DNA from: Podarcis muralis
Lineage: Eukaryota
Assembly (NCBI RefSeq): GCF_964188315.1
Contig: NC_135656.1
Coordinates: 106,826,001 to 106,890,000, forward strand
Length of the DNA: 64,000 nt
Direction: 5' to 3'
Shown: positions 20,026 through 30,953 of the stretch, in pieces
Layout: the number at the start of each line of letters is the position of its first letter
How positions within the stretch are numbered: the stretch's first letter is position 1
Made by a program: the position numbers and the translations under genes
The notes under the pieces: model-generated
Databases searched by the model: none
The model's input: only the letters and a program-made list of their open reading frames with translations
What the model was told of the DNA's origin: nothing

Positions 20026-20603
20026 TCATGGACTCAGGAGATCCATCTCATGGACCCCGGCTGGGTATTTCACTCCCATGTGCCTCAGAAACACAGAATG
20101 AGCGGGGAACCCCACCACCCACAGCAAGGGGTGGGTACGCGCCCCATTAAAAGAGGCCGGTGGGAACGTGAATATGGGGCTGTCGGTGTCCGCATCCGTA
20201 AAGGTCACACACTCCCCCACATAGTCCAGGGACACTCGGATCCTCCTTGGGGGCATGCTCAAGGACAGGGCGGTCACAGGGGACGTGAGAGCCCAGTGTT
20301 GGCCCTTCCACAACCCCACGGCCCAGATCCCCTCCTCTGGGCTGAAGCCCATCATGCCCTTCTTCTTTGACGGGTCTCGGGTGACCCCGACGGCCCAGAA
20401 TTCCCCATCGCCCACTTCCAGCTCCCAGAAGTATCTCCCAGAGGTAAACCCGTCACAGCCCAGAACCAAAGCTCTGGAATCCAATCGTTTGGGTGCGTCG
20501 GGGACGTAGTCTAAGGCGGGAAGCCTCTCCTGGAGTTCTTCGCATCCTGCGTTCCTTCGGTCCAACGGTAGAAAAGCACTTGGTACATCCGGATACGCAT
20601 CTG
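20026..20603 (-). CDS. TRIM-B last exon: PRY/SPRY (B30.2), divergent PRY
   Basis: Acceptor cctacag|CA phase 1, matching the preceding exon; LGCDGFTSGRYFWELEVG, WAVGV, EEGIWAVG, RIRVSLDY motifs; TGA at 20026-20028. Confidence 0.88.
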
Positions 20604-20821
20604 CTGTAGGTATAAGGCAAGCCGTTTTCAGTCTGAGGAAGTGAGGGGTGGGGCCATCCCACTAACAAGATTTGTTCCACAATGCAGAGGTGCCCCTCGC
20701 CTCTCCATTTTTACTACATCTCTATTGCTATAACGGCTAGATCTGATGGGAGCTGAAGTCCTAAACATCTGGCGGGCAAACAAAGAGCACAGGGTTCAGG
20801 CCCACCACTATGAAAACTCAC

Positions 20822-20878
20822 CTTTATCGTTCAGTGTTTTCACAGTCTCTCCTTTCTCCACGACAGATGTCACATTAT
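20822..20878 (-). CDS. TRIM-B exon 6 (57 bp): DNVTSVVEKGETVKTLNDK
   Basis: Acceptor tttctctag|AT, donor AAG|gtgagt, phase 1-1, restores frame to the SPRY exon. Confidence 0.8.
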
Positions 20879-22642: not shown

Positions 22643-22758
22643 CTTGGAATCTATTTAGAGTTTCCTTCAGAAGCTTCCCTTTCCGTGAGAAGTCATCCAG
22701 CCTCTCTTCGAGCTTAGGAGAAGCTTCTTCGGATGGCTGGAAATGCCCTGCTGCACAT
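22643..22758 (-). CDS. TRIM-B exon 5 (116 bp): RCAAGHFQPSEEASPKLEERLDDFSRKGKLLKETLNRFQ
   Basis: Acceptor aatgcag|A, donor AAG|gtacag, phase 2-1, canonical 116-bp exon. Confidence 0.87.
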
Positions 22759-23931: not shown

Positions 23932-23954
23932 CTGCTCATTGTTTTTTTAATGTC
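23932..23954 (-). CDS. TRIM-B exon 4 (23 bp): DIKKTMSR
   Basis: ctctctag|GACATTAAAAAAACAATGAGCAG|gtacgt; canonical 23-bp TRIM micro-exon, phase 0-2. Confidence 0.85.
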
Positions 23955-23987: not shown

Positions 23988-25848
23988 AAGGAGCTAAGTC
24001 CCACAATGCTTTGCACTAGGAGCGAGTCATAAGCTTAAAGGGGAGCCTGCCTCTGCACCCCCCATCTCAGGCTGCAGAGGACTTCCGAGAGTGCTATCAA
24101 AGGCAGGAGGGGTGGAAGCTTTGTTCTAGCCTCTGCTGCTTCACAAGGCAGGGGGTAAGTAGCCTGCCCCCCCAGTTGCCCTCAGGCTCTTACCTGGGAT
24201 CCTAGAGGTGGCACATCTGGTGTTAGCTCCAAGACAGGAGAGGTGGGGGGTGCTCTGGTTACACACGGGAGCCTTCGCGGCACGGTGGTCTCCCTGGTGC
24301 TGCAACTGTTTCTCTGAGGAGAAGGGCTGCCCTAGTTTTTAGCAGCCTTCTCCTTCCCGAACTGTCCTCCCACCCCGTCCTGCCGGTGAACAGGCTGGCT
24401 TCTCGCCCCCTCCGGGGCCTGCCCACCGGCTGCCTTTCGCCTGGAGCCGCTGGCTCCTTCCCTCAGCCACGCCACCCACACGACCTGCTGTCCCGACAGG
24501 CGCACCGCGTCGCCGCTGGAGAGGGGGTGCACCTCGGCAGAGGCAACGGCGCCCCGCTCCCAGGAGCACAGGCCCCGGCAGAGCCTCCGCAATCTCCCCA
24601 ACCCGCGATCACTGCGCCGCACTCTTCACCATCACCTGTAGTGACTCTCTGCACGCCACAGGTTACCTAAAATCGTCTCCTTCTTGCTTGTGATCAGAGA
24701 GCTGGTTTCAAGGTAATTAAAGGAGAAAAAAAAAGATTCTGTGCCAAGGGATCAAGTGCGCAGGAGCTGCCGCTCGTTTTTTTTTTAAAAAACAAACCAG
24801 CCTCACATCCTTGGAATAGCTATAAATGACGTTCACCGCAGAGTGGACCACAGGAAGACCCTAAGGAGATCCCAGAAAATGCAGGCTTTTTTGCAGGCAC
24901 ACACACTCCACAAGCCCCTTTCGTTTTCCTCCAAACGAGTAAGTAAATAAACCCCGCTCGCTGGCTGTCAAAACACAAGCGGCGTCCCTCCCCCGATATC
25001 CCCGTGGCATGCAGTCATCAGCATTATTCCAGAGACTGAAAGCTCAGAGTGACGGTTGCTCCAGTCCCACAGCCACAGCAGTGCCCCGAGTCCCCAAAAC
25101 ACCCCTAAGAGAGAGAACCCATAGGAACAGGACTGTACGTACTAGAGGTCTGCATGGCAGCCATACCCGATGTGTCCCGACATGAACCTGAAGGAATGAG
25201 GTCATCCAGGCCAGCTTCTCAACAGCCTTCAGGTCAGGCTGAGGGACCTGGAAGTACATCTGCCAACAGCAGAGTGCTCTGGTGTCATAGCCTTCCGCAA
25301 GGGGAGGAGCTACAGCGTCCCAGCCGTCCTTTGCAAGGGCCAAAGGGCGCTCTAAAAGAAGGCGAGTCGAGATCAGAGGGACGCTCCCCTCCCTCCTTCG
25401 GAATGGCCGTTTCGCAGCTCTCCGTAAGCTGGGATCATGGAGCTCCTCCTTCCCCCTCCCACCTGGCTTTGGTTCCTAAGGAACAGCCTTGCCACCTGCA
25501 CAGGGGGGGCAATCGCAGCACTTGGGCATGCGGGACAGCTGATGGGGGTCCACATAGAGACCCCGAATCCAGTATAACAGCACATATGCCGCTGTCTCCA
25601 GGAGGCTTGTGCCCCGCCAGCATCCTGTACACAAAACAGTTTGCTGCCCGTTCCAGCAGGGAGAAGGTCTAAGCTCTGCCTGGCCCAAACTCCTGCGGTG
25701 GCAAGGAAGCGGCAACTCCCGTTTTCAGATACTTGCGGGCTCTCTAGAGCTCCAGTGCCGGGGCCCCCCAATGCTTGGGGCCCTTAACCCACTGCTAGTC
25801 TCCGCTCCAGGCCAGAGAAAGAGGTCTCTGTTGATTGCAAAATCTCAC

Positions 25849-26079
25849 CTGCAAAAATTCGGCTGCCGGTTGCTTACATTTCACCTCCATCTCAGCGATC
25901 ACGTCGCCGAGACGGGAAAGCTCTTCCGAGAGTTTGGTAACCATTTCGTCCTTCCGCTTCTCTATCTCTTTATCGAGCTCTTCTAGCTGGGCGAGCAACT
26001 GCTGCTCCTCATCTTTGAGAAACTGGTGGAGGCGCTCAAATTCAGAGATGATCTCCTGTCTCTCTGCTTGGACGGTTTC
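25849..26079 (-). CDS. TRIM-B exon 3 (231 bp coiled-coil): ETVQAERQEIISEFERLHQFL...KCKQPAAEFLQ
   Basis: Acceptor cattacag|GAA, donor CAG|gtgaga, 77 codons. Confidence 0.9.
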
Positions 26080-27082: not shown

Positions 27083-27178
27083 CATGTAATCCTGAATTTT
27101 CCTCTCTCCAGTCAGCTTCTGGCTCCACAGCGTGTTCTTCTCCTGCTTCAGGATCTCTAGTTGTGCCAGAACCCTCTC
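27083..27178 (-). CDS. TRIM-B exon 2 (96 bp): ERVLAQLEILKQEKNTLWSQKLTGERKIQDYM
   Basis: Acceptor ttttctcag|GAG, donor ATG|gtaggt. Confidence 0.88.
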
Positions 27179-29299: not shown

Positions 29300-30640
29300 C
29301 ATGTGCTGTTTTGTTTGTGCTAACCACGGCACTGCCCTAATAACGGATTTTGGGGGGAGCTGAACAGGCCACCAGGACTACCCTTCTCCTGCTTGCTTTG
29401 CTCGCCACTGATTTCTGGTTTCGGAGAGCTCTCCCCCTTCCCTCCCTTACCCTGTAGTCCCGGGCTGCCCTCTCGACGTGGAAGACGGCGTGGGCCCGGT
29501 GCTCCTGGGACCGATCGCAGTGCGCGCAGATGGGCGCCTGGTCCTCCTCGCAGAAGAACTGCAGCACGTCCCGGTGCTTCTCGCACAGCTTCCCTCCAGC
29601 GCCCTCTCCGCATCCTCCTGCCGACAACCTTCTGGGCAGCGGGGGCGACGTCGACAAGTCTGCCGCCGGTGCTGCAGGAGCCGCTGACGCTACGGGAGAC
29701 GGCGGGGTGGGCGGCGTCAAGGACAGCAGCGGCGGGGGCGGCGGCGGCGCTGCTGCTGCCGGTGGTGGTGGTGCCGGTGCGCATACCGGCGCCGGAGACA
29801 CTGCGGGGGCCACTGTCATCGGCTGGTGCTGCTGGGGCAGCGGCGGCGGCGCTACCACCACGGGCGCCGCGGGCAGCGCGACCGCCCCTCCGGGCCCGGA
29901 GTCGAGCCTCTGCCTCTTGGGCCTGTCCGCCACCAGGCTGGCCAGGAGCGGCGGCGGCTTGATGGGCCTCAGGTTCCTCTTGCGGGCGGTGGCTCCGCAC
30001 TCCAGGCAGGAGATGTTGATCTTGGGCTCGCCCAGGCGCTGCCCGATGCAGGCCGTGCAGAAGTTGTGGCCGCACGGCAGGCACACCGGGTCCGGGCAGT
30101 AGACGCGGCACAGCGAGCACCACGTCTCGCTGGGGCAGCGCGGGCCCGCCGGGATCTCGGCCGGGGTCGTGCCGGGCGGAGGCGAGTCCGGCGGCGACGG
30201 CGGGGACAGGACGGACGGCAGCGGAGGCAAGAGCGGCGGCGGCGGCGCCAGCGGGCCGCCCACCGCCAGGCCCGGGTGCTGAGCGCCCCTCAGGCGGCTG
30301 CGGAGGAGCCGCTGCTGGAGCTGCTGCTCCGCCGACATCCCGCCACCAACGCCGCCGCTCATGACGCCAGCCCAGCCCAGCTCCAGCCTGCCTGCCTGCC
30401 CGCGAGGACGCCGACGACGCGCCTGCCTCCCTTCCGGCGGACGCGCCACCCGATTGGCTGAGCCGACAGGCGCTAAGCGGAAGTGAGGGGGAAGCCGGGA
30501 GACGTTACGGCCGTAACCCTTCGCGCGCTGGGCTCCAGGCGGCAAAGCGGGAAAAGGCAACGGCCCGATGTAGAAGCTGGCGCAACGTGCGCGCCGACGT
30601 CATAGGGGCCTCCAACTCCCATCAGCCCCAGGCCAGGATG
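29300..30640. promoter_or_regulatory. CpG island over TRIM-B exon 1/promoter
   Basis: Very high GC and CpG density; upstream CCAAT (gattgg), ETS (cggaagtg) and CRE-like (gacgtca) motifs. Confidence 0.7.
29451..30362 (-). CDS. TRIM-B exon 1 (304 codons): Pro-rich N-terminus, RING, 137-aa Pro/Ala linker, B-box2
   Basis: Inside ORF 29337..30560; ATG in gtcATGa context at 30362; CSLC...CGHNFCTAC...CLEC RING and CEKH...CEED...CAHC...H..H B-box; donor AGG|gtaagg. Start codon choice is inferred. Confidence 0.85.
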
Positions 30641-30953
30641 GCGAATGCTCAGGGGTGATGGGAGTTGTAGTCTTTCCCCCCAATTTTTTTTTATTGGTTT
30701 TCATAACATTATAAACAAACACATAAGACAAACAAACATAAATCATAGCCTTATTGAAAATTACACTTATTATTTTCTTTTTTCTTTTCCTTCTCCTCCT
30801 GCGATGAGGCTACATTTTAATATTTTAATGTTTCAATATTTTAATGTATTTTTAATTTTGTTTTTAAGTTGTAATCATTTAACTTGTTTTTATTATTGCT
30901 TGTAAGCCGCTCTGAGCCCGGCCTTGGCTGGGGAGGGCGGGGTATAAATAAAA

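What the first reader, a model, noticed from the sequence alone, without database searches (positions are those of the whole stretch)
29451..30362. TRIM-B: RING separated from the B-box by a 137-aa Pro/Ala linker, plus an 81-aa Pro-rich N-terminus
Seen: 81 aa precede the RING (15 in TRIM-A) and 137 aa separate RING and B-box (38 in TRIM-A). Both stretches are rich in PPP/PxxP runs, and the linker holds a basic RPKRQRL segment. All seven exons stay in frame, so the gene looks intact. Inference: an unusual TRIM architecture with a disordered SH3/WW-ligand-like scaffold and a candidate NLS. I do not recognise a named vertebrate TRIM with this layout.
Basis: partly seen in the sequence, partly recalled or inferred. 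Interest (0 to 1): 0.72.

Follow-up and report, generated by a model that had tools for sequence, protein, structure and literature searches.

The report
Squamate TRIM with long tethered RING
This is the first exon of an intact TRIM ubiquitin-ligase-type gene, already predicted in lizard and snake genome annotations, in which every squamate examined carries a conserved extra N-terminus and a long floppy proline/alanine spacer between two zinc-finger domains; it is an unusual but not unprecedented kind of variation.

Summary
Window 30362-29451 (minus strand) is one 304-codon ORF. It has 81 aa before the RING, a 41-aa RING, a 137-aa Pro/Ala-rich linker containing RPKRQRL, then a B-box. The 7-exon, 670-aa model is intact.

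It is not a new gene. All tBLASTn-detectable exons (1, 3, 5, 7) match RefSeq Podarcis muralis "TRIM15-like isoform X5" (670 aa) at 100%; exon 2 matches apart from a boundary residue, and the short exons 4 and 6 were not detected.

The layout is present in all 19 squamate species measured, from geckos to snakes: N-terminus 68-98 aa, linker 122-301 aa. The tuatara sister protein has the ordinary layout, so the remodelling most likely dates to the squamate stem.

The N-terminus is not just low complexity. It holds a predicted helix (aa 11-27) and an invariant 30-aa motif abutting the RING (dN/dS about 0.02). The K-R-x-R core is kept in 19/19 species.

The linker core is hypervariable and predicted disordered. 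No canonical SH3 or WW ligand motif is conserved; only four Ser/Thr-Pro sites are.

I found no paper describing this layout.

Verdict: a real, conserved, annotated but undescribed TRIM variant of moderate interest.

The parts
29451..30362 (-). Exon 1 coding part (304 aa): N-terminal extension, RING, linker, B-box and the start of the coiled coil. It ends at a GT donor.
   Evidence: Single ORF. Donor GT. 100% identical to RefSeq P. muralis isoforms, apart from an alignment spill into the intron.
30282..30332 (-). aa 11-27: basic amphipathic helix. aa 11-25 are invariant except positions 12 and 14.
   Evidence: AF2 helix 11-27, block pLDDT 87. Invariant columns A11, Q13, L15-R25. Net charge +3.
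30120..30209 (-). aa 52-81: near-invariant proline-rich motif abutting the RING (starts LSPPSPPDSPPPG, ends PSETW). It carries four conserved Ser/Thr-Pro sites.
   Evidence: Nearly all columns are invariant in 19 squamates. There are 10-19 synonymous against 0-1 non-synonymous differences, dN/dS about 0.02. S53, S56, S60 and T66 are kept in 18-19 of 19 species. AF2 pLDDT about 46-52, i.e. disordered.
29997..30119 (-). aa 82-122: C3HC4 RING. All eight zinc ligands are present, but it is divergent from the TRIM consensus.
   Evidence: Regex match, 41 aa. Pfam RING models score 15-19 bits, all below their cut-offs. The tuatara sister scores 43.8 bits. dN/dS 0-0.10. AF2 pLDDT 77-85.
29904..29996 (-). 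aa 123-153: conserved basic segment (net charge +8) ending in RPKRQRL (aa 147-153, nt 29904-29924). Candidate nuclear localisation signal.
   Evidence: K128, R129, R132, K135, R147, K149, R150 and R152 are invariant. K[KR]x[KR] is kept in 19/19 species. Charge.
29628..29903 (-). aa 154-245: hypervariable Pro/Ala/Thr/Ser/Val core of the linker, with a semi-conserved island around aa 205-224.
   Evidence: 32 Pro and 21 Ala of 92 residues. Total linker length is 122-301 aa across species. AF2 pLDDT 33-52. dN/dS about 0.3-0.45 on an uncertain alignment. GCG trinucleotide runs.
29478..29591 (-). aa 258-295: B-box type 2 zinc finger.
   Evidence: Pfam PF00643, E 2.9e-8, 34.2 bits against a 24.1 cut-off. 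Matches PDB B-boxes of TRIM21, TRIM5, TRIM39 and TRIM41. AF2 pLDDT 74-89.
27083..27178 (-). Exon 2 (96 nt, coiled coil).
   Evidence: AG/GT flanks. Matches orthologs.
25849..26079 (-). Exon 3 (231 nt, coiled coil).
   Evidence: AG/GT flanks. 100% identical to P0287. AF2 long helix 286-404, pLDDT 84-95.
23932..23954 (-). Exon 4 (23 nt).
   Evidence: AG/GT flanks; it encodes DIKKTMS(R) as in the orthologs.
22643..22758 (-). Exon 5 (116 nt).
   Evidence: AG/GT flanks. 100% identical to P0287.
20822..20878 (-). Exon 6 (57 nt).
   Evidence: AG/GT flanks.
20026..20603 (-). Exon 7 with the stop codon: degenerate PRY, SPRY and a lineage-specific C-terminal tail.
   Evidence: Pfam SPRY 60.6 bits; PRY only 14.6 bits against a 27.5 cut-off. 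PDB B30.2 hits to BTN3A3, TRIM15 and TRIM7, E 1e-30 to 1e-25. TGA at 20026-20028.
25143..25259 (-). Alternative in-frame cassette exon (117 nt, 39 aa), used in RefSeq isoforms X1-X4 and absent from the 670-aa form.
   Evidence: AG/GT flanks. 100% match to P0176 and P0177. 77-92% amino-acid identity to Liasis, Varanus and Lerista models.
24194..24313 (-). Second alternative cassette exon (120 nt, 40 aa), present in the 748/749-aa isoforms.
   Evidence: AG/GT flanks. Matches P0176 residues 451-492.
30363..30660 (-). 5' flank and presumed promoter inside a CpG island: CCAAT at 30457 and an ETS-like site at 30484. No TATA box and no ISRE.
   Evidence: CpG observed/expected 0.95, motif positions. 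The only consensus ISREs in the window are at 576, 42320 and 62779.

Best explanation
This is exon 1 of a single-copy class-IV TRIM gene (RING, B-box2, coiled coil, degenerate PRY, SPRY) that is confined to lepidosaurs. The window is Podarcis muralis or a very close relative, and the 670-aa model equals RefSeq 'TRIM15-like isoform X5'.

On the squamate stem, exon 1 was remodelled in three ways.
1. It gained an N-terminal extension with two invariant elements: a basic amphipathic helix, and a 30-aa proline-rich motif with four Ser/Thr-Pro sites that abuts the RING.
2. It gained a conserved, strongly basic segment just after the RING, ending in a K-R-x-R core.
3. It gained a Pro/Ala-rich, intrinsically disordered spacer that is never shorter than about 120 aa.

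Proposed mechanism (inferred, not shown): the spacer acts as a flexible tether that uncouples the RING from the B-box/coiled-coil scaffold. The invariant N-terminal motif and the basic segment act as short linear motifs: a proline-directed phosphorylation or partner-docking site, and a nuclear import signal. These would regulate or localise a RING that has itself drifted from the TRIM consensus.

The spacer sequence drifts freely and changes length by slippage in a 75% GC CpG-island exon. Composition and a minimum length are retained.
For: Shown:
- Layout and intact gene.
- Identity with RefSeq P. muralis isoforms.
- The same layout in 19 squamates spanning Gekkota, Scincoidea, Lacertoidea, Anguimorpha, Iguania and Serpentes. 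The N-terminus is 68-98 aa. The linker is 122-301 aa, and 17 of 19 species fall within 122-153.
- Uninterrupted genomic ORFs in three lineages: the window, L001 Phrynosoma and L002 Liasis.
- The squamate clade has SH-aLRT 99, with tuatara P0151 as sister, also at 99. It is set apart from the turtle, bird, crocodilian and other squamate TRIMs sampled. P0151 is 478 aa and has 15 aa before a canonical RING (43.8 bits).
- The HMMER scan of 1.84 billion representatives found alignment to query residues 1-60 only in squamate proteins.
- Invariant blocks. The N-motif has dN/dS about 0.02 despite 10-19 synonymous changes; the RING has 0-0.10.
- AF2: helix 11-27 (pLDDT about 87), RING and B-box folded, the rest below 50.
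- Conserved S/T-P sites and K-R-x-R in 18-19 of 19 species.
- Exon 1 GC 0.75, GC3 0.88 and GCG repeats. Internal repeats in the 301-aa Varanus linker.
- Short branches within the clade, consistent with a slowly evolving SPRY.

Context: TRIM21 B-box2 interacts with its RING, and TRIM5alpha activity depends on the proximity of RINGs in assemblies. Both come from the titles and abstracts of PMC5533445, PMC9675739 and PMC6299210 as listed. They suggest that RING-to-B-box spacing is functionally relevant in this family.
Against: - No expression or splicing data were obtained.
- The functions of the tether, the phospho-sites and the NLS are inference only.
- The linker dN/dS rests on an unreliable low-complexity alignment with saturated dS.
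- At 75% GC, a stop-free 92-codon stretch is expected by chance in roughly a quarter of cases (my calculation). ORF integrity alone is therefore weak evidence for the spacer.
- The full-length AF2 model was poor (mean pLDDT 49.5, SPRY not resolved) and gave no sign that the N-motif docks in cis.
- The RING scores below every Pfam RING cut-off. It reads C-L-E-C-G where canonical TRIMs have C-P-x-C-R, so it may not be an active ligase domain at all.
- The tuatara model is a single Ensembl prediction and could be N-terminally incomplete.
Confidence: 0.55

Rival explanations
1. The Pro/Ala core of the linker is a functionally neutral low-complexity expansion. It is produced by replication slippage and GC-biased composition in a CpG-island first exon, and it is tolerated because RING-to-B-box spacing does not matter for this protein. 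Only the flanking conserved motifs are functional.
For: The core is essentially unalignable between lineages. Lengths jump to 214 aa (Paroedura) and 301 aa (Varanus, with obvious internal repeats). GC is 0.75 and GC3 0.88. Trinucleotide GCG runs are present. AF2 shows no structure.
Against: The linker is never shorter than 122 aa in 19 species, across a lineage that a cited preprint (PMC12262214) dates to 200-250 My, and 17 of 19 lie within 122-153 aa. There is a semi-conserved island (P223 invariant) and a conserved pre-B-box Gly/acidic patch. dN/dS is 0.3-0.45 rather than about 1, though on a weak alignment.
Confidence: 0.3
2. Part of exon 1 is removed from the mature mRNA as an internal intron ('exitron'), so the real protein has a near-canonical RING-to-B-box spacing and the long linker is an annotation artefact.
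For: Some gene models do splice out of exon 1 just after the basic segment: Lerista P0001, Phrynosoma P0002 and Ensembl Varanus P0007. No RNA reads could be laid on the exon.
Against: Those three models also drop the B-box or join onto another gene, so they are mis-predictions. In Phrynosoma the genomic ORF is intact through the B-box. All six RefSeq P. muralis isoforms listed are 669-749 aa. The four checked (P0176, P0177, P0285, P0287) begin with the same exon-1 sequence, and three of them (P0176, P0177, P0287) map through all 304 codons of exon 1. The length differences are explained by the two cassette exons and a 3-nt alternative acceptor. RING and B-box stay in one frame despite many indels in 19 species.
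Confidence: 0.08
3. The gene is a decaying or ligase-dead TRIM, and the N-terminal region and linker are degenerating sequence of no consequence.
For: The RING is below all Pfam cut-offs. PRY is below its cut-off (14.6 bits against 27.5). The residue after the last RING Cys is Gly, not the usual Arg/Lys (alignment).
Against: RING dN/dS is 0-0.10, and N-motif dN/dS is about 0.02 with many synonymous changes. The gene is intact in all lineages. The SPRY is 84-90% identical between lacertids, anguimorphs and snakes, and terminal branches are short. This is strong purifying selection, not decay. A ligase-dead but functional scaffold is still possible, and it is compatible with the best explanation.
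Confidence: 0.03

Closest known systems
RefSeq/GenBank predicted squamate proteins: 'E3 ubiquitin-protein ligase TRIM15-like' / 'zinc finger protein RFP-like' (e.g. Podarcis muralis XP_077776361.1, Paroedura picta XP_077180781.1); Varanus komodoensis XP_044307671.1, named 'translation initiation factor IF-2-like'
   Same: They are the same gene. The P. muralis isoform X5 is 670 aa and matches the window's tBLASTn-detectable exons at 100%. All share the N-terminal motifs, the basic segment, the long Pro/Ala linker and the C-terminal tail.
   Different: Nothing differs in sequence. The names are pipeline labels that vary from species to species. No function or architecture has been described. 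Several models are mis-spliced or fused to the neighbouring TRIM.
Sphenodon punctatus A0A8D0GQL4 (P0151), the tuatara sister protein
   Same: It is 67% identical over the SPRY exon. It shares the unusual C-terminal tail and groups as sister to the squamate clade with SH-aLRT 99.
   Different: It is 478 aa, with 15 aa before the RING and about 40 aa from the RING to the B-box position. It has a canonical RING (43.8 bits) and PRY (33.7 bits), no N-terminal motifs and no K-R-Q-R-L-D. Its B-box ligands are degenerate.
Canonical class-IV TRIMs (TRIM21, TRIM5alpha, TRIM7, TRIM15, TRIM27/RFP, TRIM39)
   Same: The domain order is the same: RING, B-box2, coiled coil, B30.2. The 7-exon gene structure has the typical 96-, 231- and 23-nt exons. 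There are PDB sequence matches to their RING, B-box and SPRY domains.
   Different: They have about 15 aa before the RING and about 38 aa between RING and B-box, against 81 and 137 here. Here prolines flank the RING on both sides...GPRxPSETW-C and ...LRPIKPPPLL. By my reading of the alignment, and from memory of TRIM RING-dimer structures, canonical TRIMs have helix-forming flanks at these positions. No 1:1 mammalian ortholog was established.
TRIMs with other low-complexity insertions (recalled from memory, not tested here): human TRIM41 (acidic insert within the RING), TRIM47 (Pro-rich stretch after the RING), TRIM28/24/33 (Ala/Gly/Pro-rich N-termini)
   Same: These are TRIM proteins that tolerate long disordered stretches near the RING.
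   Different: They have different positions, compositions and classes, and none belongs to this clade. This is a lead only; I ran no comparison.
harbiTRIM cluster of squamates (Boys, Quinlan & Elde, bioRxiv 2025, PMC12262214)
   Same: Squamate-specific class-IV TRIMs in tandem clusters with PRY-SPRY genes.
   Different: harbiTRIMs are interferon-induced, copy-number variable (0-5 paralogs) and recombining. This gene is single-copy and slowly evolving, and it has no consensus ISRE near its start. The paper mentions no proline-rich or linker feature. No Harbinger-sized ORF was seen in the window, so the window is not shown to be that locus.

Membership tests
TRIM/RBCC family, class IV (C-IV) | N-terminal C3HC4 RING finger | tested here: inconclusive
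   All eight zinc ligands are present in a 41-aa C3HC4 pattern, and AF2 folds it (pLDDT 77-85). However, every Pfam RING model scores below its curated cut-off; the best is 18.9 bits against 25.2.
TRIM/RBCC family, class IV (C-IV) | B-box type 2 zinc finger after the RING | tested here: met
   PF00643, 34.2 bits against a 24.1 cut-off, aa 258-293. PDB matches to TRIM21, TRIM5, TRIM39 and TRIM41 B-boxes.
TRIM/RBCC family, class IV (C-IV) | Coiled coil following the B-box | tested here: met
   AF2 continuous helix 286-404, pLDDT 84-95, in the full-length ortholog alignment model. Pfam TRIM_CC scores only 18.3 bits against a 30 cut-off. Exons of 96 and 231 nt are typical of the family.
TRIM/RBCC family, class IV (C-IV) | C-terminal PRY/SPRY (B30.2) domain | tested here: met
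   SPRY PF00622 scores 60.6 bits against 26.3. The PRY part is degenerate (14.6 bits against 27.5). B30.2 structures are matched at E 1e-30.
Ortholog of a named amniote TRIM (TRIM15, TRIM27/RFP, TRIM7, TRIM39), as the database names imply | Groups inside that gene's clade in a tree | tested here: not met
   On the SPRY-exon tree, the squamate clade plus tuatara sits on its own long branch (0.48). It lies outside the turtle, bird and alligator RFP, TRIM7-like, TRIM39, TRIM15-like, TRIM10-like and TRIM41-like sequences. No mammalian sequences were in the tree, so 1:1 orthology to a human gene is untested rather than excluded.
Classical monopartite nuclear localisation signal | K-(K/R)-x-(K/R) core in an exposed or disordered region | tested here: met
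   KRQR at aa 149-152 is the only such match in exon 1. It is in the same column in 19/19 species and lies in a region with pLDDT below 50.
Classical monopartite nuclear localisation signal | Confers importin-dependent nuclear import | not testable with these tools
   This needs localisation of tagged protein with and without aa 147-153.
SH3 / WW (class I-III) / EVH1 / GYF ligand scaffold | Conserved consensus ligand motifs ([RK]xxPxxP, PxxPx[RK], PPxY, PPLP, PPR, [FWYL]PPPP, PPG-hydrophobic) | tested here: not met
   None of these patterns is in the same alignment column in 15 or more of 19 species. The window's own PPLP and PxxPxR instances are not conserved.
Proline-directed (Ser/Thr-Pro) phosphorylation cluster | Conserved S/T-P sites in a disordered segment | tested here: met
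   S53, S56, S60 and T66 are kept in 18-19 of 19 species. The segment pLDDT is about 46-52. Actual phosphorylation is not testable here.

The most novel reading that the evidence does not exclude
The squamate stem lineage converted an ordinary class-IV TRIM into a new kind of regulated module. The RING has proline-broken flanks and no basic residue after its last Cys, and it no longer works as a self-dimerising E2 activator. Instead it hangs on a disordered tether of at least 120 aa, and it is controlled through an invariant multi-site Ser/Thr-Pro motif and a nuclear import signal. This would be a natural experiment on how RING-to-B-box spacing governs TRIM activity, in a conserved nuclear (non-arms-race) TRIM found only in lizards and snakes.
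Probability: 0.15. Interest if true: 0.65.

Novelty: new variant of a known kind. Interest (0 to 1): 0.42.

Why it matters
In the TRIM ligases that have been studied, activity depends on how RINGs are brought together relative to the B-box and coiled-coil scaffold. Here nature has held a linker 3 to 8 times longer than usual, plus an invariant pre-RING motif, across all major squamate lineages, while the tuatara sister keeps the ordinary layout. That gives a clean comparative pair for asking what RING-to-B-box spacing and RING-flanking sequences do.

It also shows that not every gene in reptile TRIM clusters is a fast-evolving antiviral paralog. This one is single-copy and strongly constrained.

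There are practical points for annotation too. The gene's database names are inconsistent (TRIM15-like, RFP-like, TRIM7-like, IF-2-like), and several models are mis-spliced or fused.

Tried and rejected

2. Word-index protein searches with exon 1, both whole and restricted to residues 1-156, returned only two mis-spliced models. The cause was the length filter and low-complexity words. No transcript-derived fragments were found.

3. The look-up of encoding contigs found nothing on record for P0004, P0165, P0168 or P0177. Codon-level analysis therefore rests on three genomes only.

4. Full-length AF2 on 17 orthologs was too poor (mean pLDDT 49.5, SPRY unresolved) to test whether the N-motif docks on the protein's own SPRY.

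5. The canonical SH3, WW, EVH1, GYF and CIN85 motif scan was negative for conservation.

6. ISRE scan: no consensus ISRE near this gene.

7. No Harbinger-sized ORF was seen in the window.

8. I considered that the 515-520-aa snake 'TRIM7-like' proteins in the same 90% clusters were short-layout isoforms of this gene. They are the neighbouring TRIM (about 35% identity), linked into the cluster through fused models.

9. I did not send a joined spliced model of the window to any search tool. Exons were searched by reference one at a time, and the database proteins P0287 and P0004 stood in for the full length. Total length was obtained by summing exon lengths.
Full report
**What is there**

The stretch 30362..29451 on the minus strand is one open reading frame of 304 codons. 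It starts at an ATG and ends at a GT splice donor after ...DYR. Pfam finds a B-box at aa 258-293 (E 2.9e-8, above its cut-off). It also finds several RING models at aa 82-122, all below their cut-offs; the best is 18.9 bits against 25.2.

A regex on the zinc ligands gives these boundaries:
- 81 aa before RING Cys1
- a 41-aa C3HC4 RING
- a 137-aa linker
- a B-box from aa 260

The linker holds 37 Pro and 27 Ala in 137 residues, and RPKRQRL lies at aa 147-153.

The other four TRIM first exons in the window have 13-15 aa before the RING and 38-44 aa linkers.

**Gene model**

The downstream exons lie at 27178-27083, 26079-25849, 23954-23932, 22758-22643, 20878-20822 and 20603-20029. All have AG/GT flanks. 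Together with exon 1 they sum to 2010 nt = 670 codons before a TGA.

Exon 7 carries a SPRY domain (60.6 bits) and only a degenerate PRY (14.6 bits against a 27.5 cut-off). It matches solved B30.2 domains of BTN3A3, TRIM15 and TRIM7.

I did not send a joined model to any search tool. Exons were searched by reference, and database proteins stood in for the full length.

**It is an annotated gene**

A profile-free HMMER scan of 1.84 billion representatives and a word search with the C-terminal half of the gecko ortholog recovered orthologs throughout Squamata. Exons 1, 3, 5 and 7 are 100% identical to RefSeq Podarcis muralis proteins, apart from a two-residue alignment spill past the exon-1 donor. 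Exon 2 matches apart from its boundary residue, and the 23-nt and 57-nt exons 4 and 6 are too short for tBLASTn to detect. The window is therefore P. muralis or a very close relative.

Other isoforms (709/710 and 748/749 aa) add one or two in-frame cassette exons, at 25259-25143 and 24313-24194. They also use a 3-nt alternative acceptor at exon 7. The four P. muralis isoforms I examined keep the start of exon 1, and the three I mapped onto the window keep all 304 codons.

Database names differ from species to species: RFP-like, TRIM15-like, TRIM7-like, TRIM26-like, and 'translation initiation factor IF-2-like' for the Varanus protein with its 301-aa linker. Several models are mis-spliced (Lerista, Phrynosoma, Ensembl Varanus) or fused to the neighbouring TRIM. 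In Phrynosoma the genomic ORF is nevertheless intact from the ATG through the B-box.

**Distribution and origin**

I measured 19 squamate species. By established taxonomy they cover geckos, a cordylid, lacertids and an amphisbaenian, anguimorphs, iguanians and snakes. The N-terminus is 68-98 aa and the linker 122-301 aa. Seventeen of the 19 species have linkers of 122-153 aa. Pro makes up 16-29% and Ala 19-39%.

A maximum-likelihood tree of the SPRY exon places all of them in one clade (SH-aLRT 99) with short internal branches and a roughly species-like topology. A tuatara protein (P0151) is sister to the clade (SH-aLRT 99). The pair sits on a long branch away from turtle, bird, alligator and other squamate TRIMs.

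The tuatara protein is 478 aa. It has 15 aa before a canonical RING (43.8 bits), a good PRY (33.7 bits), none of the N-terminal motifs, and a degenerate B-box. In the HMMER scan, only squamate proteins align to query residues 1-60.

The parsimonious reading is that the remodelling happened on the squamate stem. A preprint on squamate TRIMs gives the age of the lineage as 200-250 My (PMC12262214).

**Anatomy of the extra sequence**

The N-terminus is not simply Pro-rich filler. Alignment of the 19 exon-1 equivalents shows:
- aa 11-25 invariant except two positions
- aa 52-81 almost wholly invariant and running straight into the RING
- a near-invariant RING
- a conserved basic stretch at aa 123-153 (net charge +8) with R147, K149, R150 and R152 invariant
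- a hypervariable core at aa ~154-245, with a semi-conserved island around aa 205-224
- a Gly/acidic patch, then the B-box

Codon comparison of the window with Phrynosoma and Liasis gives, for aa 52-81, 10-19 synonymous against 0-1 non-synonymous differences (dN/dS about 0.02). That is as tight as the RING (0-0.10). The linker core gives about 0.3-0.45, on a doubtful alignment with saturated dS.

AlphaFold2 on the alignment predicts a helix at aa 11-27 (pLDDT about 87) and folded RING and B-box domains. It gives pLDDT below 50 for 31-77 and 135-255.

Exon 1 is 75% GC, with GC3 at 0.88, and it contains GCG repeats. It lies in a CpG island with a CCAAT box and an ETS-like site, and with no TATA box or ISRE.

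None of the canonical SH3 (class I/II), WW (class I-III), EVH1, GYF or CIN85 ligand patterns is kept in the same column in 15 or more of 19 species. The window's own PPLP and PxxPxR matches are lineage-specific.

What is conserved are four Ser/Thr-Pro sites (S53, S56, S60, T66; 18-19 of 19 species) and the K-R-x-R core at aa 149 (19/19). The 'SH3/WW scaffold' reading is therefore not supported in its canonical form. A proline-directed phospho-site cluster or a non-canonical docking motif fits better. The NLS idea gains support from conservation but remains untested.

**Most likely mechanism (inference)**

I propose that the protein is a constrained, probably constitutively expressed class-IV TRIM. 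Its RING is held on a long random-coil tether, away from the B-box/coiled-coil/SPRY scaffold. The invariant pre-RING motif and the post-RING basic segment would act as regulatory and localisation motifs.

In the TRIMs that have been studied, B-box-to-RING contact and RING proximity control activity (titles and abstracts of PMC5533445, PMC9675739 and PMC6299210, listed). A linker 3-8 times longer should therefore change that control.

There are caveats. The RING is divergent, and prolines flank it on both sides. The domain may therefore bind something other than, or in addition to, an E2.

**Rivals**

1. The core is a neutral slippage product (probability 0.3). This fits the hypervariability and the repeats. 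It fits less well with a linker that never falls below 122 aa.
2. The linker is spliced out (0.08). This is favoured only by three evidently faulty models and by my lack of reads.
3. The gene is decaying (0.03). The dN/dS values contradict this.

**What failed**

Expression and exon-1 integrity in RNA are therefore untested. Nothing from those places was sent to a search tool afterwards.
- Word searches with exon 1 gave only two hits.
- Four contig look-ups were empty.
- The full-length AF2 model was too poor to test cis-docking of the N-motif.

**Verdict**

This is a real, intact, conserved and already-annotated gene. Its architecture is a genuine, squamate-wide departure from the TRIM norm. 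I found no paper that describes it in three full-text searches or in the one relevant paper I read. I class it as a new variant of a known kind, of moderate interest.

Noticed in passing
window 25143-25259 (minus strand): An in-frame 117-nt cassette exon (39 aa, starts MYFQVPQPDL) lies between exons 3 and 4. It is used in RefSeq isoforms X1-X4 and is 77-92% identical at the protein level in python, monitor and skink models. That is unusually conserved for an alternative exon inserted in the coiled-coil/linker-2 region of a TRIM.
   Followed up: partly
window 24194-24313 (minus strand): A second in-frame cassette exon (120 nt, 40 aa, Pro/Thr/Arg-rich) is present only in the 748/749-aa P. muralis isoforms. 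Conservation outside Podarcis was not examined.
   Followed up: partly
window 20598-20606 (minus strand), exon 7 acceptor: A tandem CAG|CAG acceptor explains the paired RefSeq isoform lengths that differ by one residue (670/669, 710/709, 749/748).
   Followed up: partly
window 29997-30119 (RING, aa 82-122): The squamate RING scores below all Pfam RING cut-offs, while the tuatara sister scores 43.8 bits. Squamates read C-L-E-C-G at the last Cys pair and have prolines in both RING flanks. Tuatara keeps C-P-Q-C and helix-compatible flanks. This bears on the separate note s1-180267 about a possible pseudo-ligase.
   Followed up: partly
P0151 (Sphenodon punctatus, aa ~97-135): The tuatara sister protein lacks the first Cys/His ligands of the B-box, and Pfam finds no B-box. 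The two lepidosaur lineages therefore seem to have degraded different parts of the tripartite motif.
   Followed up: no
window 20029-20140 (C-terminal tail of exon 7): A conserved C-terminal extension beyond the usual end of the SPRY domain (...HPLLWVVGFPA...GVHEMD.LSP) is shared by all squamate orthologs and partly by tuatara. It is a handy signature of this clade.
   Followed up: no
   Followed up: no
runs X1-X12: Small runs (78-162 million letters), guessed as RNA, hold 42-60% of the words of a 10-kb genomic stretch that is mostly intron. They are more likely capture or other DNA libraries than RNA, so they were not taken as expression evidence.
   Followed up: no
The TRIM studied here has none. 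Instead it has a CpG-island promoter with CCAAT (30457) and an ETS-like site (30484). This hints at constitutive rather than interferon-driven expression.
   Followed up: partly
P0161, P0163, P0292, P0306, P0317 (Eublepharis, Zootoca, Pseudonaja, Crotalus models of about 1200 aa): Several annotation pipelines fuse this gene with the neighbouring canonical TRIM into a single product of about 1200 aa. This also pulls the neighbour's 515-520-aa 'TRIM7-like' proteins into the same 90% clusters.
   Followed up: partly
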